NCBI GenBank assembly: GCA_044892525.1
Contig: CM097888.1
Location: 1,302,001 to 1,366,000, forward strand
DNA from: Schmidtea polychroa
Lineage: Eukaryota
Reading direction: 5' to 3'
DNA: 64,000 bases
Shown here: positions 9,776-35,135 of the stretch, one piece after another
How the letters are laid out: each line of letters starts with the position of its first letter
Position numbering within the stretch: the stretch's first letter is position 1
Made by a program: the position numbers and the translations under genes
The notes under the pieces: model-generated
What the model was told of the DNA's origin: nothing
What the model saw: the letters and a program-made list of their open reading frames with translations, nothing else
The model's database searches: none

Positions 9776-12700
9776 AATTAAATTATAATTTACTTTAAAA
9801 TCTAAGTAAAAATTTCAACTGTCGCACTTCGTAACAAACATTCAATGAACAATTTTTTTTTACTGTTTTGTCTTACTGTTTTTGGCATATGTATTATATA
9901 TCTACGGAATATATATCTACGAATCCGTCCAAACAAAACAAATAACCAAGAATATAAAAACGAGAATATATAAACAACTAATTTCTAAATGGAAGCGGCT
10001 TCCATATTTAATTTATTTTGTTCTCAGTAAAAGTTGACACCGTTCCCACACGAAGTTTGATAATCTGTTGTGCTTGTCTCGCATCGTGAATTTTGATATC
10101 GAGAATGATCCCTTAATCTTTGACCCGAGACTTCTCGATTAATTCGAATCTTTGGTTCTCGTTGCGGATTCGGATGCTGTCAATGTTGAGCAGGTTGCTG
10201 AAATATGATGACGGCAGGCCTGACATTTGGGCATGCGCTGACACGTGGCTATTGATTGAGCTGGGCGGCGAGGGTAGCTGGGGCAGCTCCACCGCCTCTT
10301 CGTCCCCATCCTCATCGCCACAGTAAACCTTTGGTGAAACAAATGAATTCACTGGCTGATAATCCAATGGCAGGCTTGACAGCTTCATGTCAAGGAAATG
10401 CAACTTAAAAGACCACAGATAACGCCCAAGGTCATCCTAATGTGTCGATACGAGGAAGGAGTCATTCGGTGCCATTTCCAGCTGGGTGACAACCCGACGG
10501 GTCCTGAAGCAGTCGACCAATCTATTGTTGATATAATCGAATGTCTTAACAAGATTGCCATCAGCAATCATAATGAGATCAAATTCATAGCTAAATGCGA
10601 TAGCATTGACCGGATTGGCATTGAATGAAGCCCGGATCTGCTGGAATAGAATGAATCGAGTGATTGGCCATGATATTCTGGAAATGTGCAACATCTTCAC
10701 CACGAAGCACTTTAGTATGGCTTCCTGGATACATTGCATTCTGTGTTAGGGAATCAGAGGTAATGCCATGAGTACATGCCAAATACATCTGGCACACCTC
10801 GATATTATTGGTCCGTTTCATCTGATTGTCCAGCAGCTTCTGGGAGGCCCGCAACGGTTGATATCGGGTCTCATGGTATATCGGGTCAAGCATTTGGATC
10901 TCATAATCGATAGCGCTCGGTGAGATGGTCTTAATGAGTTGCAGGCATGACATTTGGGCATGCGCTGACACGTGGCTATTGATTGAGCTGGGCAGCGAGG
11001 GTAGCTGGGGCAGCTCCACCGCCTCTTCGTCCCCATCCTCATCGCCACAGTAAACCTTTGGTGAAACCAATGAATTCACTGGCTGATAATCCAATGGCAG
11101 GCTTGACAGCTTCATGTCAAGGAAATGCAACTTAAAAGACCACAGATAACGCCCAAGGTCATTCTGATGTGTCGATACGAGGAAGGAGTCATTCGGTGCC
11201 ATTTCCAGCTGGGTGACAACCCGACGGGTCCTGAAGCAGTCGACCAATCTATTGTTGATATAATCGAATGTCTTAACAAGATTGCCATCAGCAATCATAA
11301 TGAGATCAAATTCATAGCTAAATGCGATAGCATTGACCGGATTGGCATTGAATGAAGCCCGGATCTGCTGGAATAGAATGAATCGAGTGATTGGCCATGA
11401 TATTCTGGAAATGTGCAACATCTTCACCACGAAGCACTTTAGTATGGCTTCCTGGATACATTGCATTCTGTGTTAGGGAATCAGAGGTAATGCCATGAGT
11501 ACATGCCAAATACATCTGGCACACCTCGATATTATTGGTCCGTTTCATCTGATTGTCCAGCAGCTTCTGGGAGGCCCGCAACGGTTGATATCGGGTCTCA
11601 TGGTATATCGGGTCAAGCATTTGGATCTCATAATCGATAGCGCTCGGTGAGATGGTCTTAATGAGTTGCAGGCATGACATTTGGGCATGCGCTGACACGT
11701 GGCTATTGATTGAGCTGGGCAGCGAGGTTAGCTCCACCGCCTCTTCGTCCCCATCCTCATCGCCACAGTAAACCTGTGGTGAATCCAATGAATTCACTGG
11801 CTGATAATCCTATGGCAGGCCTGACAGCTTCATGTCAAGGAAATGCAGCATTAAGGACCACAGATAAAGCCCAAGGTCATTCTGATGTGTCGATACGAGG
11901 AAGGAGTCATTCGGTGCCATTTCCAGCTGGGTGACAACCCGACGGGTCCTGAAGCAGTCGACCAATCTATTGTTGATATAATCGAATGTCTTAACAAGAT
12001 TGCCATCAGCAATCATAATGAGATCAAATTCATAGCTAAATGCGATAGCATTGACCGGATTGGCATTGAATGAAGCCCGGATCTGCTGGAATAGAATGAA
12101 TCGAGTGATTGGCCATGATATTCTGGAAATGTGCAACATCTTCACCACGAAGCACTTTAGTATGGCTTCCTGGATACATTGCATTCTGTGTTAGGGAATC
12201 AGAGGTAATGCCATGAGTACATGCCAAATACATCTGGCACACCTCGATATTATTGGTCCGTTTCATCTGATTGTCCAGCAGCTTCTGGGAGGCCCGCAAC
12301 GGTTGATATCGGGTCTCATGGTATATCGGGTCAAGCATTTGGATCTCATAATCGATAGCGCTCGGTGAGATGGTCTTAATGAGTTGCAGGCATGACATTT
12401 GGGCATGCGCTGACACGTGGCTATTGATTGAGCTGGGCAGCGAGGTTAGCTCCACCGCCTCTTCGTCCCCATCCTCATCGCCACAGTAAACCTGTGGTGA
12501 ATCCAATGAATTCACTGGCTGATAATCCTATGGCAGGCCTGACAGCTTCATGTCAAGGAAATGCAGCATTAAGGACCACAGATAAAGCCCAAGGTCATTC
12601 TGATGTGTCGATACGAGGAAGGAGTCATTCGGTGCCATTTCCAGCTGGGTGACAACCCGACGGGTCCTGAAGCAGTCGACCAATCTATTGTTGATATAAT

Positions 12701-13982
12701 CGAATGTCTTAACAAGATTGCCATCAGCAATCATAATGAGATCAAATTCATAGCTAAATGCGATAGCATTGACCGGATTGGCATTGAATGAAGCCCGGAT
12801 CTGCTGGAATAGAATGAATCGAGTGATTGGCCATGATATTCTGGAAATGTGCAACATCTTCACCACGAAGCACTTTAGTATGGCTTCCTGGATACATTGC
12901 ATTCTGTGTTAGGGAATCAGAGGTAATGCCATGAGTACATGCCAAATACATCTGGCACACCTCGATATTATTGGTCCGTTTCATCTGATTGTCCAGCAGC
13001 TTCTGGGAGGCCCGCAACGGTTGATATCGGGTCTCATGGTATATCGGGTCAAGCATTTGGATCTCATAATCGATAGCGCTCGGTGAGATGGTCTTAATGA
13101 GTTGCATGCATTTGTCATAATCACTATCCGAGCTCGCGTTGACCAACATCTCACACAAATTGTTTGCGGCAATAACCTGGCTGCTTGCAAGTTCCGCGCG
13201 CTTCCTATTGGTCTTTGTTGCTTTCATGCATTCCAATTGCTGCTTGGTGTCCTCTGAAGCATCTGCTGATTCAGATGCTGTCAATGTTGAGCAGGTTGCT
13301 GAAATATGATGACGGCAGGCCTGACATTTGGGCATGCGCTGACACGTGGCTATTGATTGAGCTGGGCGGCGAGGGTAGCTCCACCGCCTCTTCGTCCCCA
13401 TCCTCATCGCCACAGTAAACCTTTGGTGAATCCAATGAATTCACTGGCTGATAATCCTATGGCAGGCCTGACAGCTTCATGTCAAGAAAATGCAGCTTTA
13501 AGGACCACAGATAAAGCCCAAGGTCACCTTTGCATACAGGGAATCAGAGGTAATGCCATGAGTATTGATATTCTGAAAATGTATAACATCTTCACCACCA
13601 AGCACCTTTGCATTGCTTCCTGGATACATTGCATTATCTGCTGAGGAATCAGAGGTATTTAAACAAATTACTTCGAATTTGTTTTTTTTTTAATTTTTTT
13701 GTTTTTTATTTCTAGATTTTTTGTTTTTAGATTTATTTATTAAATCATTAAATAACCAATTAACATGCTTTTTTCAAAAATTGTTAAATTTTTCACGTTT
13801 TTATTTTTTTATTTAAAATCGTATTTTTTAATAAAAATTTCATTACTTTTAAATAATTCTATCAAGGGTGTTTTTTAAAATTAAAAGGTTTTCTTTAGAA
13901 TTAAAATTAGAATAACGATAACATTAAAAACAAATTTATAAATTTTTGCAAGCAACAAAATAAAGCACAGTAAAAAAAATGT

Positions 13983-14276
13983 TTACGCTTTTTTCTGTTC
14001 AGCGTTTCCATTCATTTCAATTTCATAGAATCTATTTTTTTCAAACTTTCCTGACGTTGTTTTGAAAGACTCTTTATCATTTGAAGGTACAGCTAGAATT
14101 TTTGAAATTCTAACTCCAATCGCCAAAAAAATTTTGTTCTCAGTAAAAGTTGACACCGTTCCCACACGAAGTTTGATAATCTGTTGTGGTTGTCTCGCAT
14201 CGTGAATTTTGATATCGAGAATGATCCCTTAATCTTTGACCCGAGACTTCTCGATTAATTCGAATCTTTGGTTCTC
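13983..14276 (-). pseudogene. 3' end of an unidentified gene ('Y') fused to the WDR36 fragment
   Basis: Reads RFELIEKSRVKD*GIILDIKIHDARQPQQIIKLRVGTVSTFTENKIFLAIG...NAEQKKA*. A truncated second copy lies at 10015-10160. Confidence 0.4.
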
Positions 14277-17200
14277 GATGCGGATTCGGATGCTGTCAAT
14301 GTTGAGCAGGTTGCTGATATATGATGAGGGCAGGCATGACATTTGGGCATGCGCTGACACGTGGCTATTGATTGAGCTGGGCGGCGAGGGTAGCTGGGGC
14401 AGCTCCACCGCCTCTTCGTCCCCATCCTCATCGCCACAGTAAACCTTTGGTGAATCCAATGAATTCACTGGCTGATAATCCAATGGCAGGCTTGACAGCT
14501 TCATGTCAAGGAAATGCAACTTTAAAGACCACAGATAACGCCCAAGGTCATCCTAATGTGTCGATACGAGGAAGGAGTCATTCGGTGCCATTTCCAGCTG
14601 GGTGACAACCCGACGGGTCCTGAAGCAGTCGACCAATCTATTGTTGATATAATCGAATGTCTTAACAAGATTGCCATCAGCAATCATAATGAGATCAAAT
14701 TCATAGCTAAATGCGATAGCATTGACCGGATTGGCATTGAATGAAGCCCGGATCTGCTGGAATAGAATGAATCGAGTGATTGGCCATGATATTCTGGAAA
14801 TGTGCAACATCTTCACCACGAAGCACTTTAGTATGGCTTCCTGGATACATTGCATTCTGTGTTAGGGAATCAGAGGTAATGCCATGAGTACATGCCAAAT
14901 ACATCTGGCACACCTCGATATTATTGGTCCGTTTCATCTGATTGTCCAGCAGCTTCTGGGAGGCCCGCAACGGTTGATATCGGGTCTCATGGTATATCGG
15001 GTCATGCATTTGGATCTCATAATCGATAGCGCTCGGTGAGATGGTCTTAATGAGTTGCATGCATTTGTCATAATCACTATCCGAGCTCGCGTTGACCAAC
15101 ATCTCACACAAATTGTTTGCAGCAATAACCTGGCTGCTTGCAAGTTCCGCGCGCTTCCTATTGGTCTTTGTTGCTTTCATGCATTCCAATTGCTGCTTGG
15201 TGTCCTGGGAAGCATCTGCTGATTCAGATGCTGTCAATGTTGAGCAGGTTGCTGATATATGATGAGGGCAGGCATGACATTTGGGCATGCGCTGACACGT
15301 GGCTATTGATTGAGCTGGGCGGCGAGGGTAGCTGGGGCAGCTCCACCGCCTCTTCGTCCCCATCCTCATCGCCACAGTAAACCTTTGGTGAATCCAATGA
15401 ATTCACTGGCTGATAATCCTATGGCAGGCTTGACAGCTTCATGTCAAGGAAATGCAACTTTAAGGACCACAGATAACGCCCAAGGTCATCCTAATGTGTC
15501 GATACGAGGAAGGAGTCATTCGGTGCCATTTCCAGCTGGGTGACAACCCGACGGGTCCTGAAGCAGTCGACCAATCTATTGTTGATATAATCGAATGTCT
15601 TAACAAGATTGCCATCAGCAATCATAATGAGATCAAATTCATAGCTAAATGCGATAGCATTGACCGGATTGGCATTGAATGAAGCCCGGATCTGCTGGAA
15701 TAGAATGAATCGAGTGATTGGCCATGATATTCTGGAAATGTGCAACATCTTCACCACGAAGCACTTAAGTATGGCTTCCTGGATACATTGCATTCTGTGC
15801 TAGGGAATCAGAGGTAACCTGGCTGCTTGCAAGTTCCGCGCGCTTCCTATTGGTCTTTGTTGCTTTCATGCGTTCCAATTGCTGCTTGGTGTCCTGGGAA
15901 GCATCTGCTGATTCAGATGCTGTCAATGTTGAGCAGGTTGCTGAAATATGATGACGGCAGGCCTGACATTTGGGCATGCGCTGACACGTGGCTATTGATT
16001 GAGCTGGGCGGCGAGGGTAGCTGGGGCAGCTCCACCGCCTCTTCGTCCCCATCCTCATCGCCACAGTAAACCTTTGGTGAAACCAATGAATTCACTGGCT
16101 GATAATCCAATGGCAGGCTTGACAGCTTCATGTCAAGGAAATGCAACTTAAAAGACCACAGATAACGCCCAAGGTCATCCTAATGTGTCGACACGAGGAA
16201 GGAGTCATTCGGTGCCATTTCCAGCTGGGTGACAACCCGACGGGTCCTGAAGCAGTCGACCAATCTATTGTTGATATAATCGAATGTCTTAACAAGATTG
16301 CCATCAGCAATCATAATGAGATCAAATTCATAGCTAAATGCGATAGCATTGACCGGATTGGCATTGAATGAAGCCCGGATCTGCTGGAATAGAATGAATC
16401 GAGTGATTGGCCATGATATTCTGGAAATGTGCAACATCTTCACCACGAAGCACTTTAGTATGGCTTCCTGGATACATTGCATTCTGTGTTAGGGAATCAG
16501 AGGTAATGCCATGAGTACATGCCAAATACATCTGGCACACCTCGATATTATTGGTCCGTTTCATCTGATTGTCCAGCAGCTTCTGGGAGGCCCGCAACGG
16601 TTGATATCGGGTCTCATGGTATATCGGGTCAAGCATTTGGATCTCATAATCGATAGCGCTCGGTGAGATGGTCTTAATGAGTTGCAGGCATGACATTTGG
16701 GCATGCGCTGACACGTGGCTATTGATTGAGCTGGGCAGCGAGGGTAGCTCCACCGCCTCTTCGTCCCCATCCTCATCGCCACAGTAAACCTGTGGTGAAT
16801 CCAATGAATTCACTGGCTGATAATCCTATGGCAGGCCTGACAGCTTCATGTCAAGGAAATGCAGCATTAAGGACCACAGATAAAGCCCAAGGTCATTCTG
16901 ATGTGTCGATACGAGGAAGGAGTCATTCGGTGCCATTTCCAGCTGGGTGACAACCCGACGGGTCCTGAAGCAGTCGACCAATCTATTGTTGATATAATCG
17001 AATGTCTTAACAAGATTGCCATCAGCAATCATAATGAGATCAAATTCATAGCTAAATGCGATAGCATTGACCGGATTGGCATTGAATGAAGCCCGGATCT
17101 GCTGGAATAGAATGAATCGAGTGATTGGCCATGATATTCTGGAAATGTGCAACATCTTCACCACGAAGCACTTTAGTATGGCTTCCTGGATACATTGCAT

Positions 17201-20200
17201 TCTGTGTTAGGGAATCAGAGGTAATGCCATGAGTACATGCCAAATACATCTGGCACACCTCGATATTATTGGTCCGTTTCATCTGATTGTCCAGCAGCTT
17301 CTGGGAGGCCCGCAACGGTTGATATCGGGTCTCATGGTATATCGGGTCAAGCATTTGGATCTCATAATCGATAGCGCTCGGTGAGATGGTCTTAATGAGT
17401 TGCAGGCATGACATTTGGGCATGCGCTGACAGGTGGCTATTGATTGAGCTGGGCAGCGAGGGTAGCTCCACCGCCTCTTCGTCCCCATCCTCATCGCCAC
17501 AGTAAACCTTTGGTGAATCCAATGAATTCACTGGCTGATAATCCTATGGCAGGCCTGACAGCTTCATGTCAAGGAAATGCAGCATTAAGGACCACAGATA
17601 AAGCCCAAGGTCATTCTGATGTGTCGATACGAGGAAGGAGTCATTCGGTGCCATTTCCAGCTGGGTGACAACCCGACGGGTCCTGAAGCAGTCGACCAAT
17701 CTATTGTTGATATAATCGAATGTCTTAACAAGATTGCCATCAGCAATCATAATGAGATCAAATTCATAGCTAAATGCGATAGCATTGACCGGATTGGCAT
17801 TGAATGAAGCCCGGATCTGCTGGAATAGAATGAATCGAGTGATTGGCCATGATATTCTGGAAATGTGCAACATCTTCACCACGAAGCACTTTAGTATGGC
17901 TTCCTGGATACATTGCATTCTGTGTTAGGGAATCAGAGGTAATGCCATGAGTACATGCCAAATACATCTGGCACACCTCGATATTATTGGTCCGTTTCAT
18001 CTGATTGTCCAGCAGCTTCTGGGAGGCCCGCAACGGTTGATATCGGGTCTCATGGTATATCGGGTCAAGCATTTGGATCTCATAATCGATAGCGCTCGGT
18101 GAGATGGTCTTAATGAGTTGCAGGCATGACATTTGGGCATGCGCTGACACGTGGCTATTGATTGAGCTGGGCAGCGAGGGTAGCTCCACCGCCTCTTCGT
18201 CCCCATCCTCATCGCCACAGTAAACCTGTGGTGAATCCAATGAATTCACTGGCTGATAATCCTATGGCAGGCCTGACAGCTTCATGTCAAGGAAATGCAG
18301 CATTAAGGACCACAGATAAAGCCCAAGGTCATTCTGATGTGTCGATACGAGGAAGGAGTCATTCGGTGCCATTTCCAGCTGGGTGACAACCCGACGGGTC
18401 CTGAAGCAGTCGACCAATCTATTGTTGATATAATCGAATGTCTTAACAAGATTGCCATCAGCAATCATAATGAGATCAAATTCATAGCTAAATGCGATAG
18501 CATTGACCGGATTGGCATTGAATGAAGCCCGGATCTGCTGGAATAGAATGAATCGAGTGATTGGCCATGATATTCTGGAAATGTGCAACATCTTCACCAC
18601 GAAGCACTTTAGTATGGCTTCCTGGATACATTGCATTCTGTGTTAGGGAATCAGAGGTAATGCCATGAGTACATGCCAAATACATCTGGCACACCTCGAT
18701 ATTATTGGTCCGTTTCATCTGATTGTCCAGCAGCTTCTGGGAGGCCCGCAACGGTTGATATCGGGTCTCATGGTATATCGGGTCAAGCATTTGGATCTCA
18801 TAATCGATAGCGCTCGGTGAGATGGTCTTAATGAGTTGCAGGCATGACATTTGGGCATGCGCTGACAGGTGGCTATTGATTGAGCTGGGCAGCGAGGGTA
18901 GCTCCACCGCCTCTTCGTCCCCATCCTCATCGCCACAGTAAACCTTTGGTGAATCCAATGAATTCACTGGCTGATAATCCTATGGCAGGCCTGACAGCTT
19001 CATGTCAAGGAAATGCAGCATTAAGGACCACAGATAAAGCCCAAGGTCATTCTGATGTGTCGATACGAGGAAGGAGTCATTCGGTGCCATTTCCAGCTGG
19101 GTGACAACCCGACGGGTCCTGAAGCAGTCGACCAATCTATTGTTGATATAATCGAATGTCTTAACAAGATTGCCATCAGCAATCATAATGAGATCAAATT
19201 CATAGCTAAATGCGATAGCATTGACCGGATTGGCATTGAATGAAGCCCGGATCTGCTGGAATAGAATGAATCGAGTGATTGGCCATGATATTCTGGAAAT
19301 GTGCAACATCTTCACCACGAAGCACTTTAGTATGGCTTCCTGGATACATTGCATTCTGTGTTAGGGAATCAGAGGTAATGCCATGAGTACATGCCAAATA
19401 CATCTGGCACACCTCGATATTATTGGTCCGTTTCATCTGATTGTCCAGCAGCTTCTGGGAGGCCCGCAACGGTTGATATCGGGTCTCATGGTATATCGGG
19501 TCAAGCATTTGGATCTCATAATCGATAGCGCTCGGTGAGATGGTCTTAATGAGTTGCAGGCATGACATTTGGGCATGCGCTGACAGGTGGCTATTGATTG
19601 AGCTGGGCAGCGAGGGTAGCTCCACCGCCTCTTCGTCCCCATCCTCATCGCCACAGTAAACCTTTGGTGAATCCAATGAATTCACTGGCTGATAATCCTA
19701 TGGCAGGCCTGACAGCTTCATGTCAAGGAAATGCAGCATTAAGGACCACAGATAAAGCCCAAGGTCATTCTGATGTGTCGATACGAGGAAGGAGTCATTC
19801 GGTGCCATTTCCAGCTGGGTGACAACCCGACGGGTCCTGAAGCAGTCGACCAATCTATTGTTGATATAATCGAATGTCTTAACAAGATTGCCATCAGCAA
19901 TCATAATGAGATCAAATTCATAGCTAAATGCGATAGCATTGACCGGATTGGCATTGAATGAAGCCCGGATCTGCTGGAATAGAATGAATCGAGTGATTGG
20001 CCATGATATTCTGGAAATGTGCAACATCTTCACCACGAAGCACTTTAGTATGGCTTCCTGGATACATTGCATTCTGTGTTAGGGAATCAGAGGTAATGCC
20101 ATGAGTACATGCCAAATACATCTGGCACACCTCGATATTATTGGTCCGTTTCATCTGATTGTCCAGCAGCTTCTGGGAGGCCCGCAACGGTTGATATCGG

Positions 20201-23200: not shown

Positions 23201-26200
23201 CGAGGGTAGCTCCACCGCCTCTTCGTCCCCATCCTCATCGCCACAGTAAACCTGTGGTGAATCCAATGAATTCACTGGCTGATAATCCTATGGCAGGCCT
23301 GACAGCTTCATGTCAAGGAAATGCAGCATTAAGGACCACAGATAAAGCCCAAGGTCATTCTGATGTGTCGATACGAGGAAGGAGTCATTCGGTGCCATTT
23401 CCAGCTGGGTGACAACCCGACGGGTCCTGAAGCAGTCGACCAATCTATTGTTGATATAATCGAATGTCTTAACAAGATTGCCATCAGCAATCATAATGAG
23501 ATCAAATTCATAGCTAAATGCGATAGCATTGACCGGATTGGCATTGAATGAAGCCCGGATCTGCTGGAATAGAATGAATCGAGTGATTGGCCATGATATT
23601 CTGGAAATGTGCAACATCTTCACCACGAAGCACTTTAGTATGGCTTCCTGGATACATTGCATTCTGTGTTAGGGAATCAGAGGTAATGCCATGAGTACAT
23701 GCCAAATACATCTGGCACACCTCGATATTATTGGTCCGTTTCATCTGATTGTCCAGCAGCTTCTGGGAGGCCCGCAACGGTTGATATCGGGTCTCATGGT
23801 ATATCGGGTCAAGCATTTGGATCTCATAATCGATAGCGCTCGGTGAGATGGTCTTAATGAGTTGCAGGCATGACATTTGGGCATGCGCTGACACGTGGCT
23901 ATTGATTGAGCTGGGCAGCGAGGGTAGCTCCACCGCCTCTTCGTCCCCATCCTCATCGCCACAGTAAACCTTTGGTGAATCCAATGAATTCACTGGCTGA
24001 TAATCCTATGGCAGGCCTGACAGCTTCATGTCAAGGAAATGCAGCATTAAGGACCACAGATAAAGCCCAAGGTCATTCTGATGTGTCGATACGAGGAAGG
24101 AGTCATTCGGTGCCATTTCCAGCTGGGTGACAACCCGACGGGTCCTGAAGCAGTCGACCAATCTATTGTTGATATAATCGAATGTCTTAACAAGATTGCC
24201 ATCAGCAATCATAATGAGATCAAATTCATAGCTAAATGCGATAGCATTGACCGGATTGGCATTGAATGAAGCCCGGATCTGCTGGAATAGAATGAATCGA
24301 GTGATTGGCCATGATATTCTGGAAATGTGCAACATCTTCACCACGAAGCACTTTAGTATGGCTTCCTGGATACATTGCATTCTGTGTTAGGGAATCAGAG
24401 GTAATGCCATGAGTACATGCCAAATACATCTGGCACACCTCGATATTATTGGTCCGTTTCATCTGATTGTCCAGCAGCTTCTGGGAGGCCCGCAACGGTT
24501 GATATCGGGTCTCATGGTATATCGGGTCAAGCATTTGGATCTCATAATCGATAGCGCTCGGTGAGATGGTCTTAATGAGTTGCAGGCATGACATTTGGGC
24601 ATGCGCTGACACGTGGCTATTGATTGAGCTGGGCAGCGAGGGTAGCTCCACCGCCTCTTCGTCCCCATCCTCATCGCCACAGTAAACCTTTGGTGAATCC
24701 AATGAATTCACTGGCTGATAATCCTATGGCAGGCCTGACAGCTTCATGTCAAGGAAATGCAGCATTAAGGACCACAGATAAAGCCCAAGGTCATTCTGAT
24801 GTGTCGATACGAGGAAGGAGTCATTCGGTGCCATTTCCAGCTGGGTGACAACCCGACGGGTCCTGAAGCAGTCGACCAATCTATTGTTGATATAATCGAA
24901 TGTCTTAACAAGATTGCCATCAGCAATCATAATGAGATCAAATTCATAGCTAAATGCGATAGCATTGACCGGATTGGCATTGAATGAAGCCCGGATCTGC
25001 TGGAATAGAATGAATCGAGTGATTGGCCATGATATTCTGGAAATGTGCAACATCTTCACCACGAAGCACTTTAGTATGGCTTCCTGGATACATTGCATTC
25101 TGTGTTAGGGAATCAGAGGTAATGCCATGAGTACATGCCAAATACATCTGGCACACCTCGATATTTATGGTCCGTTTCATCTGATTGTCCAGCAGCTTCT
25201 GGGAGGCCCGCAACGGTTGATATCGGGTCTCATGGTATATCGGGTCAAGCATTTGGATCTCATAATCGATAGCGCTCGGTGAGATGGTCTTAATGAGTTG
25301 CAGGCATGACATTTGGGCATGCGCTGACACGTGGCTATTGATTGAGCTGGGCAGCGAGGGTAGCTCCACCGCCTCTTCGTCCCCATCCTCATCGCCACAG
25401 TAAACCTGTGGTGAATCCAATGAATTCACTGGCTGATAATCCTATGGCAGGCCTGACAGCTTCATGTCAAGGAAATGCAGCATTAAGGACCACAGATAAA
25501 GCCCAAGGTCATTCTGATGTGTCGATACGAGGAAGGAGTCATTCGGTGCCATTTCCAGCTGGGTGACAACCCGACGGGTCCTGAAGCAGTCGACCAATCT
25601 ATTGTTGATATAATCGAATGTCTTAACAAGATTGCCATCAGCAATCATAATGAGATCAAATTCATAGCTAAATGCGATAGCATTGACCGGATTGGCATTG
25701 AATGAAGCCCGGATCTGCTGGAATAGAATGAATCGAGTGATTGGCCATGATATTCTGGAAATGTGCAACATCTTCACCACGAAGCACTTTAGTATGGCTT
25801 CCTGGATACATTGCATTCTGTGTTAGGGAATCAGAGGTAATGCCATGAGTACATGCCAAATACATCTGGCACACCTCGATATTATTGGTCCGTTTCATCT
25901 GATTGTCCAGCAGCTTCTGGGAGGCCCGCAACGGTTGATATCGGGTCTCATGGTATATCGGGTCAAGCATTTGGATCTCATAATCGATAGCGCTCGGTGA
26001 GATGGTCTTAATGAGTTGCATGCATTTGTCATAATCACTATCCGAGCTCGCGTTGACCAACATCTCACACAAATTGTTTGCGGCAATAACCTGGCTGCTT
26101 GCAAGTTCCGCGCGCTTCCTATTGGTCTCTGTTGCTTTCATGCATTCCAATTGCTGCTTGGTGTCTTGGGAAGCATCTGCTGACTCATCCTGGCCTTCAT

Positions 26201-29200
26201 CCAGCCAGCGCAGCCCATCCAATGCCTCCGTGACCTGCGGCAAGAAGAATGCAGTCGATGCCAATCGTTTGGTTGCGTTCTCGTTGCGGATTCGGATGCT
26301 GTCAATGTTGAGCAGGTTGCTGAAATATGATGACGGCAGGCCTGACATTTAGGCATGCGCTGACACGTGGCTATTGATTGAGCTGGGCGGCGAGGGTAGC
26401 TGGGGCAGCTCCACCGCCTCTTCGTCCCCATCCTCATCGCCACAGTAAACCTTTGGTGAATCCAATGAATTCACTGGCTGATAATCCAATGGCAGGCTTG
26501 ACAGCTTCATGTCAAGGAAATGCAGCTTTAAGGACCACAGATAAAGCCCAAGGTCATTCTGATGTGTCGATACGAGGAAGGAGTCATTCGGTGCCATTTC
26601 CAGCTGGGTGACAACCCGACGGGTCCTGAAGCAGTCGACCAATCTATTGTTGATATAATCGAATGTCTTAACAAGATTGCCATCAGCAATCATAATGAGA
26701 TCAAATTCATAGCTAAATGCGTTAGCATTGACCGGATTGGCATTGAATGAAGCCCGGATCTGCTGGAATAGAATGAATCGAGTGATTGGCCATGATATTC
26801 TGGAAATGTGCAACATCTTCACCACGAAGCACTTTAGTATGGCTTCCTGGATACATTGCATTCTGTGTTAGGGAATCAGAGGTAATGCCATGAGTACATG
26901 CCAAATACATCTGGCACACCTCGATATTATTGGTCCGTTTCATCTGATTGTCCAGCAGCTTCTGGGAGGCCCGCAACGGTTGATATCGGGTCTCATGGTA
27001 TATCGGGTCAAGCATTTGGATCTCATAATCGATAGCGCTCGGTGAGATGGTCTTAATGAGTTGCATGCATTTGTCATAATCACTATCCGAGCTCGCGTTG
27101 ACCAACATCTCACACAAATTGTTTGCGGCAATAACCTGGCTGCTTGCAAGTTCCGCGTGCTTCCTATTGGTCTTTGTTGCTTTCATGCGTTCCAATTGCT
27201 GCTTGGTGTCCTGGGAAGCATCTGCTGATTCAGATGCTGTCAATGTTGAGCAGGTTGCTGAAATATGATGACGGCAGGCCTGACATTTGGGTATGCGCTG
27301 ACACGTGGCTATTGATTGAGCTGGGCGGCGAGGGTAGCTGGGGCAGCTCCACCGCCTCTTCGTCCCCATCCTCATCGCCACAGTAAACCTTTGGTGAATC
27401 CAATGAATTCACTGGCTGATAATCCAATGGCAGGCTTGACAGCTTCATGTCAAGGAAATGCAGCTTTAAGGACCACAGATAAAGCCCAAGGTCATTCTGA
27501 TGTGTCGATACGAGGAAGGAGTCATTCGGTGCCATTTCCAGCTGGGTGACAACCCGACGGGTCCTGAAGCAGTCGACCAATCTATTGTTGATATAATCGA
27601 ATGTCTTAACAAGATTGCCATCAGCAATCATAATGAGATCAAATTCATAGCTAAATGCGATAGCATTGACCGGATTGGCATTGAATGAAGCCCGGATCTG
27701 CTGGAATAGAATGAATCGAGTGATTGGCCATGATATTCTGGAAATGTGCAACATCTTCACCACGAAGCACTTTAGTATGGCTTCCTGGATACATTGCATT
27801 CTGTGTTAGGGAATCAGAGGTAATGCCATGAGTACATGCCAAATACATCTGGCACACCTCGATATTATTGGTCCGTTTCATCTGATTGTCCAGCAGCTTC
27901 TGGGAGGCCCGCAACGGTTGATATCGGGTCTCATGGTATATCGGGTCAAGCATTTGGATCTCATAATCGATAGCGCTCGGTGAGATGGTCTTAATGAGTT
28001 GCATGCATTTGTCATAATCACTATCCGAGCTCGCGTTGACCAACATCTCACACAAATTGTTTGCGGCAATAACCTGGCTGCTTGCAAGTTCCGCGCGCTT
28101 CCTATTGGTCTCTGTTGCTTTCATGCATTCCAATTGCTGCTTGGTGTCTTGGGAAGCATCTGCTGACTCATCCTGGCCTTCATCCAGCCAGCGCAGCCCA
28201 TCCAATGCCTCCGTGACCTGCGGCAAGAAGAATGCAGTCGATGCCAATCGTTTGGTTGCGTTCTCGTTGCGGATTCGGATGCTGTCAATGTTGAGCAGGT
28301 TGCTGAAATATGATGACGGCAGGCCTGACATTTAGGCATGCGCTGACACGTGGCTATTGATTGAGCTGGGCGGCGAGGGTAGCTGGGGCAGCTCCACCGC
28401 CTCTTCGTCCCCATCCTCATCGCCACAGTAAACCTTTGGTGAATCCAATGAATTCACTGGCTGATAATCCAATGGCAGGCTTGACAGCTTCATGTCAAGG
28501 AAATGCAGCTTTAAGGACCACAGATAAAGCCCAAGGTCATTCTGATGTGTCGATACGAGGAAGGAGTCATTCGGTGCCATTTCCAGCTGGGTGACAACCC
28601 GACGGGTCCTGAAGCAGTCGACCAATCTATTGTTGATATAATCGAATGTCTTAACAAGATTGCCATCAGCAATCATAATGAGATCAAATTCATAGCTAAA
28701 TGCGTTAGCATTGACCGGATTGGCATTGAATGAAGCCCGGATCTGCTGGAATAGAATGAATCGAGTGATTGGCCATGATATTCTGGAAATGTGCAACATC
28801 TTCACCACGAAGCACTTTAGTATGGCTTCCTGGATACATTGCATTCTGTGTCAGGGAATCAGAGGTAATGCCATGAGTACATGCCAAATACATCTGGCAC
28901 ACCTCGATATTATTGGTCCGTTTCATCTGATTGTCCAGCAGCTTCTGGGAGGCCCGCAACGGTTGATATCGGGTCTCATGGTATATCGGGTCAAGCATTT
29001 GGATCTCATAATCGATAGCGCTCGGTGAGATGGTCTTAATGAGTTGCAGGCATGACATTTGGGCATGCGCTGACACGTGGCTATTGATTGAGCTGGGCAG
29101 CGAGGGTAGCTCCACCGCCTCTTCGTCCCCATCCTCATCGCCACAGTAAACCTTTGGTGAATCCAATGAATTCACTGGCTGATAATCCTATGGCAGGCCT

Positions 29201-30849
29201 GACAGCTTCATGTCAAGGAAATGCAGCATTAAGGACCACAGATAAAGCCCAAGGTCATTCTGATGTGTCGATACGAGGAAGGAGTCATTCGGTGCCATTT
29301 CCAGCTGGGTGACAACCCGACGGGTCCTGAAGCAGTCGACCAATCTATTGTTGATATAATCGAATGTCTTAACAAGATTGCCATCAGCAATCATAATGAG
29401 ATCAAATTCATAGCTAAATGCGATAGCATTGACCGGATTGGCATTGAATGAAGCCCGGATCTGCTGGAATAGAATGAATCGAGTGATTGGCCATGATATT
29501 CTGGAAATGTGCAACATCTTCACCACGAAGCACTTTAGTATGGCTTCCTGGATACATTGCATTCTGTGTTAGGGAATCAGAGGTAATGCCATGAGTACAT
29601 GCCAAATACATCTGGCACACCTCGATATTATTGGTCCGTTTCATCTGATTGTCCAGCAGCTTCTGGGAGGCCCGCAACGGTTGATATCGGGTCTCATGGT
29701 ATATCGGGTCAAGCATTTGGATCTCATAATCGATAGCGCTCGGTGAGATGGTCTTAATGAGTTGCAGGCATGACATTTGGGCATGCGCTGACACGTGGCT
29801 ATTGATTGAGCTGGGCAGCGAGGGTAGCTCCACCGCCTCTTCGTCCCCATCCTCATCGCCACAGTAAACCTTTGGTGAATCCAATGAATTCACTGGCTGA
29901 TAATCCTATGGCAGGCCTGACAGCTTCATGTCAAGGAAATGCAGCATTAAGGACCACAGATAAAGCCCAAGGTCATTCTGATGTGTCGATACGAGGAAGG
30001 AGTCATTCGGTGCCATTTCCAGCTGGGTGACAACCCGACGGGTCCTGAAGCAGTCGACCAATCTATTGTTGATATAATCGAATGTCTTAACAAGATTGCC
30101 ATCAGCAATCATAATGAGATCAAATTCATAGCTAAATGCGATAGCATTGACCGGATTGGCATTGAATGAAGCCCGGATCTGCTGGAATAGAATGAATCGA
30201 GTGATTGGCCATGATATTCTGGAAATGTGCAACATCTTCACCACGAAGCACTTTAGTATGGCTTCCTGGATACATTGCATTCTGTGTTAGGGAATCAGAG
30301 GTAATGCCATGAGTACATGCCAAATACATCTGGCACACCTCGATATTATTGGTCCGTTTCATCTGATTGTCCAGCAGCTTCTGGGAGGCCCGCAACGGTT
30401 GATATCGGGTCTTATGGTATATCGGGTCAAGCATTTGGATCTCATAATCGATAGCGCTCGGTGAGATGGTCTTAATGAGTTGCAGGCATGACATTTGGGC
30501 ATGCGCTGACACGTGGCTATTGATTGAGCTGAGCAGCGAGGGTAGCTCCACCGCCTCTTCGTCCCCATCCTCATCGCCACAGTAAACCTGTGGTGAATCC
30601 AATGAATTCACTGGCTGATAATCCTATGGCAGGCCTGACAGCTTCATGTCAAGGAAATGCAGCATTAAGGACCACAGATAAAGCCCAAGGTCATTCTGAT
30701 GTGTCGATACGAGGAAGGAGTCATTCGGTGCCATTTCCAGCTGGGTGACAACCCGACGGGTCCTGAAGCAGTCGACCAATCTATTGTTGATATAATCGAA
30801 TGTCTTAACAAGATTGCCATCAGCAATCATAATGAGATCAAATTCATAG

Positions 30850-32043
30850 CTAAATGCGATAGCATTGACCGGATTGGCATTGAATGAAGCCCGGATCTGC
30901 TGGAATAGAATGAATCGAGTGATTGGCCATGATATTCTGGAAATGTGCAACATCTTCACCACGAAGCACTTTAGTATGGCTTCCTGGATACATTGCATTC
31001 TGTGTTAGGGAATCAGAGGTAATGCCATGAGTACATGCCAAATACATCTGGCACACCTCGATATTATTGGTCCGTTTCATCTGATTGTCCAGCAGCTTCT
31101 GGGAGGCCCGCAACGGTTGATATCGGGTCTCATGGTATATCGGGTCAAGCATTTGGATCTCATAATCGATAGCGCTCGGTGAGATGGTCTTAATGAGTTG
31201 CATGCATTTGTCATAATCACTATCCGAGCTCGCGTTGACCAACATCTCACACAAATTGTTTGCGGCAATAACCTGGCTGCTTCTAAGTTCCGCGCGCTTC
31301 CTATTGGTCTCTGTTGCTTTCATGCATTCCAATTGCTGCTTGATGTCTTGGGAAGCATCTGCTGACTCATCCTGGCCTTCATCCAGCCAGCGCAGCCCAT
31401 CCAATGCCTCCGTGACCTGCGGCAAGAAGAATGCAGTCGATGCCAATCGTTTGGTTGCGTTCTCGTTGCGGATTCGGATGCTGTCAATGTTGAGCAGGTT
31501 GCTGAAATATGATGACGGCAGGCCTGACATTTGGGTATGCGCTGACACGTGGCTATTGATTGAGCTGGGCGGCGAGGGTAGCTGGGGCAGCTCCACCGCC
31601 TCTTCGTCCCCATCCTCATCGCCACAGTAAACCTTTGGTGAATCCAATGAATTCACTGGCTGATAATCCAATGGCAGGCTTGACAGCTTCATGTCAAGGA
31701 AATGCAGCTTTAAGGACCACAGATAAAGCCCAAGGTCATTCTGATGTGTCGATACGAGGAAGGAGTCATTCGGTGCCATTTCCAGCTGGGTGACAACCCG
31801 ACGGGTCCTGAAGCAGTCGACCAATCTATTGTTGATATAATCGAATGTCTTAACAAGATTGCCATCAGCAATCATAATGAGATCAAATTCATAGCTAAAT
31901 GCGATAGCATTGACCAGATTGGCATTGAATGAAGCCCGGATCTGCTGGAATAGAATGAATCGAGTGATTGGCCATGATATTCTGGAAATGTGCAACATCT
32001 TCACCACGAAGCACTTTAGTATGGCTTCCTGGATACATTGCAT
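30850..32043 (-). pseudogene. WDR36: Longest uninterrupted unit: intronless WDR36/UTP21 C-terminal fragment (last WD repeats plus Utp21 domain) flanked by gene-X sequence
   Basis: AIAFS...VKTFD...RLVDCF...MAPNDSFLVSTHQNDLGLYLWS...LSSLPLDYQP, MSGLPSSYFSNLLNIDSIRIRN...AFFLP and YDKCMQLIKTISPSAIDYEIQML...NIEVCQMYLA align by eye, in order, with recalled WDR36 motifs (LIDCF, SPTGDFLATSH..LGIYLWSN, LPADYVP, LLNLDVIKKKN, APFFIP, LKESGPSGIETELRSL, FELAQAYL). Confidence 0.85.
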
Positions 32044-34419
32044 TCTGTGTTAGGGAATCAGAGGTAATGCCATGAGTACATGCCAAATACATCTGGCACA
32101 CCTCGATATTATTGGTCCGTTTCATCTGATTGTCCAGCAGCTTCTGGGAGGCCCGCAACGGTTGATATCGGGTCTCATGGTATATCGGGTCAAGCATTTG
32201 GATCTCATAATCGATAGCGCTCGGTGAGATGGTCATAATGAGTTGCATGTATTTGTCATAATCACTATCCGAGTTCGCGTTGACCAACATCTCACACAAA
32301 TTGTTTGGGCCAATAACCTGGCTGCTTGCAAGTTCCGCGCGCTTCCTATTGGTCTTTGTTGCTTTCATGCGTTCCAATTGCTGCTTGGTGTCCTGGGAAG
32401 CATCTGCTGATTCAGATGCTGTCAATGTTGAGCAGGTTGCTGAAATATGATGAGGGCAGGCCTGACATTTGGGTATGCGCTGACACGTGGCTATTGATTG
32501 AGCTGGGCAGCGAGGGTAGCTGGGGCAGCTCCACCGCCTCTTCGTCCCCATCCTCATCGCCACAGTAAACCTTTGGTGAATCCAATGAATTCACTGGCTG
32601 ATAATCCAATGGCAGGCTTGACAGCTTCATGTAAAGGAAATGCAGCTTTAAGGACCACAGATAAAGCCCAAGGTCATTCTGATGTGTCGATACGAGGAAG
32701 GAGTCATTCGGTGCCATTTCCAGCTGGGTGACAACCCGACGGGTCCTGAAGCAGTCGACCAATCTATTGTTGATATAATCGAATGTCTTAACAAGATTGC
32801 CATCAGCAATCATAATGAGATCAAATTCATAGCTAAATGCGATAGCATTGACCAGATTGGCATTGAATGAAGCCCGGATCTGCTGGAATAGAATGAATCG
32901 AGTGATTGGCCATGATATTCTGGAAATGTGCAACATCTTCACCACGAAGCACTTTAGTATGGCTTCCTGGATACATTGCATTCTGTGCTAGGGAATCAGA
33001 GGTAATGCCATGAGTACATGCCAAATACATCTGGCACACCTCGATATTATTGGTCCGTTTCATCTGATTGTCCAGCAGCTTCTGGGAGGCCCGCAACGGT
33101 TGATATCGGGTCTCATGGTATATCGGGTCAAGCATTTGGATCTCATAATCGATAGCGCTCGGTGAGATGGTCATAATGAGTTGCATGTATTTGTCATAAT
33201 CACTATCCGAGTTCGCGTTGACCAACATCTCACACAAATTGTTTGGGCCAATAACCTGGCTGCTTGCAAGTTCCGCGCGCTTCCTATTGGTCTTTGTTGC
33301 TTTCATGCGTTCCAATTGCTGCTTGGTGTCCTGGGAAGCATCTGCTGATTCAGATGCTGTCAATGTTGAGCAGGTTGCTGAAATATGATGACGGCAGGCC
33401 TGACATTTGGGCATGCGCTGACACGTGGCTATTGATTGAGCTGGGCGGCGAGGGTAGCTGGGGCAGCTCCACCGCCTCTTCGTCCCCATCCTCATCGCCA
33501 CAGTAAACCTTTGGTGAATCCAATGAATTCACTGGCTGATAATCCTATGGCAGGCCTGACAGCTTCATGTCAAGAAAATGCAGCTTTAAGGACCACAGAT
33601 AAAGCCCAAAGTCACCTTTGCATACAGGGAATCAGAGGTATGGCCATGAGTATTGATATTCTAGAAATGTGCAACATCTTCACCACGAAGCACTTTAGTA
33701 TGGCTTCCTGGATACATTGCATTTTCTGTGCTAGGGAATCAGAGTTAATGCCATGAGTACATGCCAAATACATCTGGCACACCTCGATATTATTGGTCCG
33801 TCTCATCTGATTGTCCAGCAGCATCAGGAAGGCCTGCAATGGTTGATATCGGGTCTCATGGTATATCAGGTCAAGCATTTGGATCTCATAATCGACACGT
33901 GGCTATTGATTGAGCTGGGCGGCGAGGGTAGCTGGGGCAGCTCCACCGCCTCTTCGTCCCCATTCTTCATGTCAAGGAAATGCAGCTTTAAAGACCACAG
34001 ATAACGCCCAAGGTCATCCTAATGTGTCGATACGAGGAAGGCGTCATTCGGTGCCATTTCCAGCTGGGTGACAACCCGACGGGTCCTGAAGCAGTCGACC
34101 AATCTATTTTTGATATAATCGAATGTCTTAACAAGATTGCCATCAGCAATCATAATGAGATCAAATTCATAGCTAAATGCGATAGAATTGACCGGATTGG
34201 CATTGAATGAAGCCCGGATCTGCTGGAATAGAATGAATCGAGTGATTGGCCATGATATTCTGGAAATGTGCAACATCTTCACCACGAAGCACTTTAGTAT
34301 GGCTTCCTGGATACATTGCATTCTGTGTTAGGGAATCAGAGGTAATGCCATGAGTACATGCCAAATACATCTGGCACACCTCGATATTATTGGTCCGTTT
34401 CATCTGATTGTCCAGCAGC

Positions 34420-34543
34420 TTTGGGGTCCATGTGTATGTTACTTGGGATTACAATTACAATTGTTGTCATAGGATCGCATTTTGGGATAAGAAATTTCTC
34501 AAAAGTTAAACCTTCAAAGCGTTGGACAAGTTCCAGTACCTAA
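34420..34543 (+). pseudogene. 3' fragment of an MFS transporter paralogue fused to the array end
   Basis: TTGGGGTCCATGTGTATGTTACTTGGGATTAC is identical to about 48637-48668. It reads LGSMCMLLGITITIVVIGSH versus LGSMCMLLGITILIIIVGSH in the downstream MFS gene. Confidence 0.8.
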
Positions 34544-35135
34544 GCAGTGGATTTGATGGTTAATAGTTGCAATATTTACTTTTGTTATTAGTTAAAGTAT
34601 TTTTTGTATTAATTACATTCATCAGTCAAAGAATTATCTTATTTCTAATATTATTCAAACAAATCTTAACGAGGAATTTCTATCAAAGTAGAATAAAGTA
34701 TAAAGAAAGAATTAAGCATAAAACGTTAATCAACAAAATGCATTCATACAGACATTTATTAAATCTAAATGAAATAAGACAGTCAATGTTATTTTAATGG
34801 CAAACATATTTCAAGTTTATTTGGATTTTGTCATTAGAATTTAAAAAACTCGTTGCCATAAGGATTGAACTATGTGACCTTGCAATCAAGCATCAGATAA
34901 ACAAGAAACCAATTTGCCATTAGAAATCGCATTAAAGCATTCTGCCATCCGAAAGAAAATGACTTTTCATTGTTTTTAAAATTTTGATTTTAAGAAAAAA
35001 TATTTATTCTTTTTATTTATTTTTATATTGAAGTTGCTACATTTTAAAATTGTGAAATTCAGGAGAAATATGACCCTAAGCAAATTATTTGGAAAAGATT
35101 ATTGGAAAAATTATAAAAAATATTCAAAAAAAGAA

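What the first reader, a model, noticed from the sequence alone, without database searches (positions are those of the whole stretch)
10015..34421. A 24-kb satellite built from a fragment of the essential ribosome-biogenesis gene WDR36/UTP21 fused to pieces of two other genes
Seen: 29 near-identical core copies whose minus strand encodes the last WD repeats and Utp21-like domain, joined to unrelated segments X and Y. No unit length is a multiple of 3, and stop codons (CCA TAG, GCC TAA) are shared between copies, so it is not a polyprotein. Established: WDR36/Utp21 is a small-subunit processome component and normally single-copy. Inference: a young gene-derived satellite caught during its birth. 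If transcribed, it could produce small RNAs against WDR36, by analogy with Su(Ste)-type arrays.
Basis: partly seen in the sequence, partly recalled or inferred. Interest (0 to 1): 0.8.

Follow-up and report, generated by a model that had tools for sequence, protein, structure and literature searches.

The report
Amplified chimeric WDR36 retro-pseudogene array
A 24-kb block in a planarian (Schmidtea polychroa) chromosome is about 30 head-to-tail copies of a dead, intron-less fragment of the ribosome-assembly gene WDR36 fused to a piece of the microtubule gene GCP6, a clear but not unprecedented case of a repeat array born from a reverse-transcribed gene copy.

Summary
Window 10,008-34,425 is a tandem array: 29 full cores and about 31 partial units, with periods of 718, 938 and 1045 bp. 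Its GC content is 47% against 20-30% in the flanks. The minus strand matches the end of the second WDR36 propeller and the Utp21 domain.

New here:
- The WDR36 part lacks two canonical GT-AG introns of the parental gene on contig C2, so it came from spliced mRNA.
- The 111-bp linker in every unit is a piece of the 35-aa coding repeat of the GCP6 orthologue (C4:7.61 Mb), in the same orientation.
- The extra segments of the longer units are WDR36 itself. The 938- and 718-bp units are microhomology-flanked deletion derivatives of the 1045-bp unit.
- A third fragment, X, from a dispersed ORF family, sits only at the two block ends.
- Copies evolve neutrally (pN/pS about 0.76, shared stop codons).
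- Short-read contigs confirm the chimeric junctions at high depth.
- An RNA run shows only parental mRNA.
- A DNA run from another lineage of the same species label lacks the array.

The genome matches the S. polychroa assembly schPol2.

Verdict: a young, lineage-restricted, tandemly amplified chimeric processed pseudogene. The small-RNA idea is untested. Other first readers of this scan noted further gene-derived arrays and mosaic intron-less pseudogenes in this genome.

The parts
14124..34425 (-). Main array block (block 2): X fragment at the low-coordinate end, then about 26 units of 718, 938 or 1045 bp, with degenerate rearranged units at the high-coordinate end (33,343-34,425).
   Evidence: Segment map; repeat families.
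10008..13657 (-). Array block 1: X fragment plus about 5 units. It is 99.1% identical over 2.9 kb to 15,906-18,845 of block 2, a multi-unit duplication.
13658..14123 (.). Unique AT-rich spacer between the two blocks.
   Evidence: no other copy in the window.
25741..26785 (-). Reference full-length 1045-bp unit. On the + strand it reads L 25741-25851 (GCP6 piece), C 25852-26032, B2 26033-26393, B1 26394-26643, A 26644-26785. The coding order is A-B1-B2-C-L.
16407..25740 (-). Homogenised core: 13 consecutive 718-bp units that differ from their consensus by 0-3 nt. The 718-bp form is the 1045-bp unit minus 327 bp (in frame), with 8 bp of microhomology at the junction.
25599..25740 (-). Segment A (example copy): 142 bp, 100% identical to the end of a parental WDR36 exon (L024 2270-2411). 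The A|B1 boundary is an exact exon-exon junction: the intron at L024 2412-2536, GT..AG, is absent.
   Evidence: The RNA contig has the same junction.
26032..26033 (-). Second exact exon-exon junction (B2|C): the parental intron at L024 3157-3235, GTAAGT..CAG, is absent.
25741..25851 (-). Linker L (example copy): 104 of 111 bp align at 93% to one 105-bp (35-aa) repeat of the GCP6 orthologue at G000:C4:7.61 Mb. It has the same orientation as the WDR36 fragment and is in frame with it at the C|L junction.
10015..10162 (-). Segment X (second copy at 14,128-14,278): the 3' part of a dispersed, uncharacterised ORF family of about 120 aa, with at least 24 loci at 75-82% nucleotide identity. It is joined to WDR36 segment B2a and is found only at block ends.
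33615..33765 (-). Relic unit with about 1.25 GCP6 repeats in their native 105-bp register (counterpart at 13,527-13,665). The captured GCP6 piece was therefore once longer than L.
30850..32043 (-). Longest ORF (397 aa) in one 1045-bp unit. It runs from out-of-frame L through the WDR36 fragment into L read in the GCP6 frame. It is not conserved in other units.
34426..40776 (+). Right flank: a 99.6% segmental duplicate of C4:1,269,689-1,276,077, which has no WDR36 units beside it. It starts inside a truncated MFS-transporter exon paralogue (homologous to window 48,642-48,740 within ORF 48,355-48,768).

Best explanation
The block is a tandemly amplified, non-coding, chimeric processed pseudogene.

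Proposed origin (the first step is shown, the later ones are inferred as marked):
1. A spliced WDR36 mRNA was reverse-transcribed. A 943-nt internal piece, covering the last propeller blades and most of the Utp21 domain with two introns gone, became joined in the same orientation to a little over one 105-bp coding repeat of the GCP6 gene. At one end it was joined to a piece of a dispersed ORF family. The join is inferred to come from reverse-transcriptase template switching or capture of cDNA pieces at a break.
2. The chimera sits at a segmental-duplication breakpoint in a transposon- and satellite-rich region of chromosome 4.
3. The 1045-bp WDR36+GCP6 unit was then multiplied head to tail. 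Unequal crossing-over is inferred, possibly started by GCP6 repeats flanking the WDR36 piece.
4. Microhomology-mediated deletions produced the 938- and 718-bp forms. The 718-bp form was recently homogenised and expanded in the centre of the array.

The copies drift neutrally and most likely have no function. The array is restricted to some lineages of Schmidtea polychroa.
For: RNA origin:
- The unit is collinear with parental L024 2270-2411, 2537-3156 and 3236-3416. Two GT..AG introns (125 and 79 bp, 18-20% GC) are removed exactly.
- An RNA-run contig of 1571 nt has the same two junctions and continues into parental exons.

Second donor:
- L matches the 105-bp repeat inside a 922-aa ORF that has a GCP C-terminal domain (E 2e-35). 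PDB best hits are GCP6 at E 1e-23, against GCP5 at 1e-7.
- Relic units keep 1.25 repeats in native register.

Single locus: genome-wide, WDR36-propeller matches lie only at the two C2 parental loci and at 30 places in this window.

Neutrality:
- 26 majority differences from the parent: 7 synonymous and 19 nonsynonymous.
- Codon positions are 8:9:9 and pN/pS is 0.76.
- A premature TAG is present in 19 of 26 units.
- Unit lengths are not multiples of 3.

Amplification pattern:
- The centre is homogeneous (0-3 differences) and the edges diverge to 94-97% identity.
- Deletion junctions carry 8-10 bp of microhomology.
- There is a multi-unit duplication between the blocks.

Not an assembly artefact:
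- Illumina contigs with 0 mismatches cross A|L, L|C and A|B1.
- The array-type linker has depth 738 in run X3. GCP6-type linker contigs, which represent at most 10 gene repeats, reach 185. That implies tens of copies.

Lineage restriction: run X9 (same species label, slightly different WDR36 allele) shows the parental gene with introns and the GCP6 repeats but no array-type linker or junction.
Against: - No poly(A) tract or target-site duplication was found. The fragment lacks the mRNA 3' end, so the classical hallmarks of LINE-mediated retroposition are missing.
- How the three pieces were joined is inferred only. Nothing shows that the GCP6 or X pieces came from RNA, since both lie within single exons or ORFs.
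- The first 203 bp of the WDR36 fragment, which cross an exon junction, have no fixed difference from the parent. The rest differs by 2.6-4% (P about 0.002). A single old retrocopy does not explain this.
- Absence of function rests on neutral substitution patterns and on contigs of one RNA run. Small RNAs and stranded RNA-seq were not examined.
- The depth figures come from ATAC-type libraries and contig k-mer depths, so the copy number is only approximate.
- The short-read runs that carry the array come from the study that produced the assembly, so they are independent in technology but not in sample.
Confidence: 0.8

Rival explanations
1. The array is a small-RNA (piRNA or siRNA) source locus that regulates WDR36 and/or GCP6 in trans, in the manner of Su(Ste)/Stellate.
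For: Each unit holds a 203-bp stretch 100% identical to WDR36 mRNA and about 100 bp at 93% identity to GCP6 repeats, enough for perfect-match small RNAs. The unexpected perfect conservation of those 203 bp (P about 0.002) could reflect selection for targeting. The flanking MFS exon fragment and transposon fragments lie on the + strand, so read-through from them would give antisense WDR36 RNA.
Against: No array-specific junction appears in the contigs of RNA run X5, which holds the parental WDR36 and GCP6 mRNAs well. The chimeric ORF is absent from a protein collection built partly from assembled RNA runs. All units share one orientation, so there is no hairpin or inverted structure. Another lineage of the same species label lacks the array, so any such function is dispensable. 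Outside the 203 bp the sequence drifts neutrally.
Confidence: 0.08
2. The array arose from an extrachromosomal circle. A chimeric cDNA circle (WDR36 fragment closed through the GCP6 piece) was copied by rolling-circle replication and the concatemer integrated at a break, rather than the array growing by stepwise unequal crossing-over.
For: The unit is a closed permutation (A-B-C-L-A). The array ends fall at arbitrary points of the unit: C position 112 at one end and B2a at the other. The array sits exactly at a segmental-duplication breakpoint, consistent with insertion at a break.
Against: The array shows the gradient expected of in-place unequal exchange: homogeneous centre, divergent edges, several length variants in runs, and multi-unit duplications. 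Relic units with more than one GCP6 repeat suggest a longer founding structure. The tools offer no direct test.
Confidence: 0.1
3. The array is an assembly artefact, either over-expansion of one or two copies or mis-joined reads.
For: Thirteen units are nearly identical, a situation in which assemblers can miscount. Copy number could not be anchored to a clean single-copy depth.
Against: Independent Illumina contigs reproduce the chimeric junctions and both deletion junctions with 0 mismatches. Depths are roughly 4 times those of the 10-copy GCP6 repeat contigs. The 1045-only segment has about one-eighth of the core depth, which matches the assembly's 3 units out of about 30.
Confidence: 0.02

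Closest known systems
D4Z4 macrosatellite (DUX4 retrogene array) of primates
   Same: It is a kilobase-scale unit derived from an intron-less, RNA-derived gene copy, repeated head to tail tens of times near a chromosome end, and copy number and composition vary between individuals. (Comparison from my own knowledge, not tested here.)
   Different: Each D4Z4 unit keeps a complete DUX4 ORF that can be expressed. Here each unit holds only a C-terminal fragment with stops and frameshifts, fused to a piece of a second gene.
Su(Ste)/Stellate arrays of Drosophila melanogaster
   Same: (From my own knowledge.)
   Different: Su(Ste) produces antisense transcripts and piRNAs. Here no array transcript was seen, all units share one orientation, and another lineage lacks the array.
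Chimeric retrocopies made by LINE reverse-transcriptase template switching
   Same: Intron-less fragments of different cellular RNAs are joined in the same orientation. (Mechanism recalled from my own knowledge.)
   Different: No poly(A) tract, target-site duplication or LINE-derived part was found, and the product here was afterwards amplified in tandem.
Secondary propagation of a processed pseudogene by segmental duplication (SEPTIN14P-CICP family, PMC13015009)
   Same: One RNA-derived insertion is multiplied afterwards by DNA-level duplication in a structurally unstable, duplication-rich region (abstract read).
   Different: There the copies are dispersed with segmental duplications. Here they form a strict head-to-tail array with satellite-like homogenisation.
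Mosaic intron-less host-gene pseudogenes noted elsewhere in this genome by this scan (s1-237125, s1-247005)
   Same: They are patchworks of intron-less host-gene fragments in one orientation in the same genome (unverified notes).
   Different: The flanks, spacer and X segment of this array share no sequence with the region of the reported leader module, and those loci are not tandemly amplified.

Membership tests
Processed pseudogene / retrocopy | Introns of the parental gene are precisely absent. | tested here: met
   Two GT..AG introns (L024 2412-2536 and 3157-3235) are removed exactly, with the same junctions as in an mRNA contig.
Processed pseudogene / retrocopy | Located away from the parental gene. 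| tested here: met
   The parent is on contig C2 at 13.40 and 13.64 Mb. The array is on C4 at 1.31 Mb.
Processed pseudogene / retrocopy | 3' poly(A) tract and target-site duplications. | tested here: not met
   The fragment stops inside the Utp21 domain, and no A-run or duplicated flank is seen at either array edge. These features could have been lost when the unit was defined.
Satellite / macrosatellite DNA | Head-to-tail tandem units in tens of copies. | tested here: met
   There are 29-31 units, all in one orientation. Read contigs link C to L to A.
Satellite / macrosatellite DNA | Concerted evolution: units are more alike than expected from their age. | tested here: met
   The 718-bp units differ by 0-0.4% from each other and by 2.4-3.1% from the parent, and the array edges are more divergent.
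Satellite / macrosatellite DNA | Present at several loci or as a sizeable share of the genome (classical satellite). | tested here: not met
   There is a single 24-kb locus in a 781-Mb assembly. 'Macrosatellite' or 'tandem pseudogene array' is the better term.
WDR36/Utp21 protein family (functional member) | Two complete beta-propellers plus the Utp21 domain in one open frame. | tested here: not met
   Only propeller-2 profile positions 240-330 of 335 and Utp21 positions 10-172 of 209 are present, with stops and frameshifts.
Su(Ste)-type small-RNA-producing array | High nucleotide identity to a target gene. | tested here: met
   Identity to WDR36 is 95-100%, including 203 bp at 100%.
Su(Ste)-type small-RNA-producing array | Transcription of the array (antisense or bidirectional) and derived small RNAs. 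| tested here: inconclusive
   No array junction appears in the contigs of one RNA run and no matching protein in the collection. Contigs drop rare variants, and small-RNA data could not be examined.
D4Z4-like retrogene macrosatellite | A complete retrogene ORF in each unit. | tested here: not met
   The units carry a gene fragment only, and the longest ORF (397 aa) occurs in a single unit.

The most novel reading that the evidence does not exclude
The array is a lineage-specific trans-silencing locus. Read-through or bidirectional transcription of about 30 copies yields piRNAs or siRNAs that perfectly match a 203-bp stretch of WDR36 mRNA and nearly match the GCP6 repeats. These would tune ribosome biogenesis or centrosome function in the strains that carry the array. 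The anomalous perfect conservation of those 203 bp across a splice junction would then be its footprint, maintained by selection or by RNA-templated conversion.
Probability: 0.07. Interest if true: 0.7.

Novelty: new member of a known kind. Interest (0 to 1): 0.38.

Why it matters
The locus gives an unusually clean, datable picture of how a tandem repeat array can arise. The source genes, the RNA intermediate, the founding 1045-bp unit, its deletion derivatives and the recent homogenised expansion are all still readable. At least one other lineage of the same species label lacks the array.

That makes it a usable natural system for studying how repeat arrays start in planarians, whose genomes are known for rapid structural change (PMC11410931).

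It also matters for annotation. About 30 WDR36-like and GCP6-like fragments in schPol2 are pseudogene pieces, not a gene family expansion.

By itself it does not reveal a new kind of element or a new function.

Tried and rejected
- Tandem Repeats Finder missed the array because its longest period is 500.
- Foreign or horizontally acquired DNA, suggested by 47% GC against about 25% in the flanks, was rejected. The sequence is 95-100% identical to this genome's own exons, and the parental introns are AT-rich.
- The '105-bp satellite' origin of the linker was rejected. That repeat lies within a continuous 922-aa ORF of the GCP6 orthologue.
- The X family could not be identified. Pfam gave nothing significant, the ESM Atlas gave only scores below 0.9, and copy comparison shows two short conserved blocks with no recognisable transposon features.
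- A link to the 'leader module' mosaic pseudogenes (s1-237125) was tested by blastn of the flanks, spacer, X and unit against C4:6,883,001-6,946,000. There were no hits.
- A search for the chimeric ORF in the 5.8-billion-cluster protein collection found nothing.
- I considered reading 'organism B' runs (X16-18) as presence in a second species and rejected it. All components are about one-seventh of those in X3, with identical letters. The species of that study differ by 0.3-0.6 substitutions per 4-fold site. The same strain under another label, or carry-over between libraries, is more likely.
- Literature searches for a WDR36-derived satellite found nothing relevant.
- No earlier notes exist for this window.
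Full report
**1. Observation**

The region stands out at once. GC is 0.41-0.48 from 10 to 34 kb and 0.19-0.31 on both sides. Tandem Repeats Finder missed it because its longest period is 500. The repeat finder reports 31 copies of a 300-nt core, with spacings of 718 (most), 938 and 1045, plus 727, 929, 1024 and 689.

I cut one 1045-bp unit into segments and mapped them back. The array runs from about 10,008 to 34,425, and every piece lies on the minus strand. It consists of two blocks, 10,008-13,657 and 14,124-34,425, separated by 466 bp of unique AT-rich DNA.

The minus-strand ORFs match two Pfam families:
- Utp21 (PF04192), E down to 3e-20.
- The C-terminal end of the second WDR36/Utp21 propeller (PF25168), profile positions 240-330 of 335.

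PDB phmmer gives human WDR36 residues 814-899 of 951. Unit lengths are not multiples of 3, and the shared stops 'CCA TAG' (19 units) and 'GCC TAA' (2 units) are there.

**2. The genome**

The window is G000:C4:1,302,001-1,366,000 of a 781,270,316-bp assembly in 1012 contigs, and C2 is 189,691,935 bp long. Table 1 of PMC11410931 lists schPol2 (Schmidtea polychroa) with 1013 contigs, 781,290,622 bp and N50 189,691,935 bp. The identity of the N50 with the length of C2 makes the assignment very likely.

**3. Where the unit comes from**

A search of the whole genome with one unit finds collinear pieces at two places on C2, 237,662 bp apart. These lie in a segmental duplication of at least 16 kb at 99.8-99.9% identity. 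Each copy has a 597-aa open exon covering propeller-2 positions 3-270, followed by further WDR36 exons. This is the parental gene.

In coding orientation the 1045-bp unit is made of these pieces:
- L024 2270-2411.
- L024 2537-3156.
- L024 3236-3416.
- 111 further bases (linker L).

The two skipped stretches begin with GT and end with AG (GTAATT...CAATAG and GTAAGT...TTCAG). They are 18-20% GC and are removed to the base. A 1571-nt contig from an RNA run has the same two junctions and continues into parental exons on both sides. A DNA run shows the same exon flanked by the intron.

The WDR36 part of the unit therefore descends from spliced mRNA. It is a retrocopy fragment, not a genomic duplicate.

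**4. The other pieces**

*Linker L.* L matches a '105-bp tandem repeat' at C4:7.61 Mb. That repeat lies inside a continuous 922-aa ORF as ten 35-aa repeats, upstream of a gamma-tubulin-complex C-terminal domain with Pfam E 2e-35. The best solved relatives of that domain are GCP6, at E about 1e-23, against about 1e-7 for GCP5.

L has the same orientation as the WDR36 fragment, and the WDR36 frame runs on into the GCP6 frame. Phase agreement has a one-in-three chance, so I give it no weight. Two atypical units (13,527-13,665 and 33,615-33,765) carry about 1.25 GCP6 repeats in their native register, so the captured piece was once longer.

*Long-unit segments.* The segments that make units 938 or 1045 bp long are WDR36 exon sequence. 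The 938-bp form lacks 107 bp and the 718-bp form lacks 327 bp of the 1045-bp unit. Their junctions carry 10 and 8 bp of microhomology respectively.

*Segment X.* A third fragment, X (148 bp), follows WDR36 segment B2a only at the low-coordinate end of each block. It is the 3' part of an ORF of about 120 aa found at 24 or more dispersed loci at 75-82% identity. It is again in the same orientation, and I could not identify it.

'Pieces of two other genes' is therefore half right.

**5. State of the copies**

The majority sequence of the units differs from the parent at 26 sites:
- 7 are synonymous and 19 nonsynonymous.
- Codon positions are 8:9:9.
- pN/pS is 0.76.

A premature TAG sits in 19 of 26 units. 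This is neutral drift. Units differ from the parent by 2.4-3.1%. The thirteen central 718-bp units differ from their consensus by only 0-3 bases, and edge units are 94-97% identical. The amplification is thus much younger than the retrocopy and shows the usual pattern of a homogenised centre with older edges.

One oddity remains. The first 203 bp of the fragment, which cross the first exon junction, have no fixed difference from the parent. Given the rate elsewhere, P is about 0.002. Conversion from the genomic parent could not cross the junction without bringing the intron in, so I leave this unexplained.

**6. Surroundings**

The array lies among other satellites: 22-bp units at 8,029-9,775 and 66-bp units at 58.6 and 63.3 kb. 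Transposase fragments are also nearby (hAT at 5,267-5,602 and DDE_3 at 35,649-36,206).

Its right edge abuts a 6.4-kb, 99.6% duplicate of C4:1,269,689-1,276,077. That duplicate begins inside a truncated MFS-transporter exon, and the other copy has no WDR36 units beside it. The array therefore sits exactly at a duplication breakpoint. No poly(A) tract or target-site duplication is visible.

**7. Read evidence (contigs only, so no true depth)**

*Runs X3 and X16* (the 2024 study; Nextera adapter ends, consistent with that paper's ATAC-seq):
- Contigs with 0 mismatches cross A|L, L|C and the A|B1 exon junction.
- Both deletion junctions are seen.
- In X3 the array-type linker has word depth about 738. 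GCP6-type linker contigs, representing at most ten repeats, reach 185.
- The 1045-only segment has about 78 against 570-770 for the core, which fits 3 of about 30 units.

This rules out a one- or two-copy artefact, although the sample is probably the assembled strain.

*X16-18 ('organism B').* Every component is about one-seventh of X3, with identical letters. The species of that study differ by 0.3-0.6 substitutions per 4-fold site. I therefore read this as the same strain under another label, or carry-over, and not as a second species.

*Run X5 (RNA).* It shows parental WDR36 mRNA and GCP6 repeats but no array junction.

*Run X9 (DNA?, 2023 study, same species label).*
- It shows the parental gene with introns (depth 50-69) and GCP6 repeats (274).
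- It shows no array-type linker at all.
- Its WDR36 allele differs slightly from the reference parent.

Another lineage therefore lacks the array. Two short contigs in X9 (54 and 60 nt, depth 16-17) cross the exon junctions with the parental letter. They may be cDNA carry-over or an unamplified retrocopy.

The junction-spanning ORF has no relative in the 5.8-billion-cluster protein collection.

**8. Mechanism**

Shown:
- RNA origin of the WDR36 fragment.
- Fusion to a GCP6 repeat piece.
- Tandem amplification at one locus.
- Deletion derivatives.
- Neutral drift.
- Presence/absence difference between samples.

Inferred:
- The pieces were joined by reverse-transcriptase template switching or by capture of cDNA at a break. 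The same orientation of all three pieces and the breakpoint location fit both routes.
- Amplification went by unequal exchange, possibly seeded by GCP6 repeats on both sides of the WDR36 piece. That would explain why each unit keeps about one repeat.
- A rolling-circle origin is not excluded.

Function: most likely none. The small-RNA idea stays open but has nothing positive behind it, and the array has no inverted units.

**9. Comparison and novelty**

The nearest known things are:
- Retrogene-derived macrosatellites such as D4Z4/DUX4.
- Gene-fragment arrays such as Su(Ste).
- Chimeric retrocopies.
- Secondary propagation of processed pseudogenes in duplication-rich regions (PMC13015009).

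This locus combines features of all four, but each feature is known. No report of a WDR36-derived array turned up.

Notes from other readers of this scan mention another gene-derived array and several mosaic intron-less pseudogenes in this genome. I tested one possible link, the leader module, and found none.

I class this as a new member of a known kind. It is of moderate interest as a well-resolved example and as an annotation warning.

Noticed in passing
L023:3525-6293 (G000:C4:7,608,524-7,611,292, minus strand): The GCP6 orthologue carries ten 35-aa (105-bp) tandem repeats that are 96% alike at the DNA level, just upstream of its C-terminal GCP domain. This resembles, from memory, the repeat insertion of human GCP6, and suggests a fast-evolving coding minisatellite in an essential centrosome gene.
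   Followed up: partly
G000:C2:13,396,348-13,412,279 and 13,634,000-13,650,000 (L021/L024, L022/L025): The parental WDR36 gene lies in a segmental duplication of at least 16 kb at 99.8-99.9% identity, with copies 237,662 bp apart. It is either a true recent duplication of an essential gene or an assembly duplication. Contig depths in run X9 (50-69 against about 27 per GCP6 repeat) hint at two real copies.
   Followed up: partly
window 41378-45091 (minus strand): A 1237-aa ORF with only a weak Endonuclease VII match (E 7e-4), possibly a large transposon protein. It lies about 7 kb right of the array.
   Followed up: no
window 8029-9775; 58611-59864 and 63318-63847: Further satellites are present: a 22-bp unit in 79 copies directly left of the array, and a 66-bp unit in 19 and 8 copies with 131/197-bp higher-order periods. 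The neighbourhood is generally prone to tandem repeats.
   Followed up: no
window 25575-25628 and 26003-26062 as laid in run X9: In a DNA run that lacks the array, two short contigs at about half single-copy depth cross the WDR36 exon-exon junctions and carry the parental letter. They could be cDNA carry-over or an unamplified retrocopy that might be the array's precursor.
   Followed up: no
window 25538-25740 and equivalent positions in all units (WDR36 cDNA-fragment positions 1-203): There is no fixed difference from the parent over 203 bp spanning an exon junction, while the rest of the fragment differs by 2.6-4% (P about 0.002). This is unexplained.
   Followed up: partly
window 34426-40776 vs G000:C4:1,269,689-1,276,077; window 40198-40785 and 48355-48768: There are local duplications of an MFS-transporter gene region. 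One 6.4-kb copy at 99.6% identity ends exactly at the array edge, inside an exon.
   Followed up: partly
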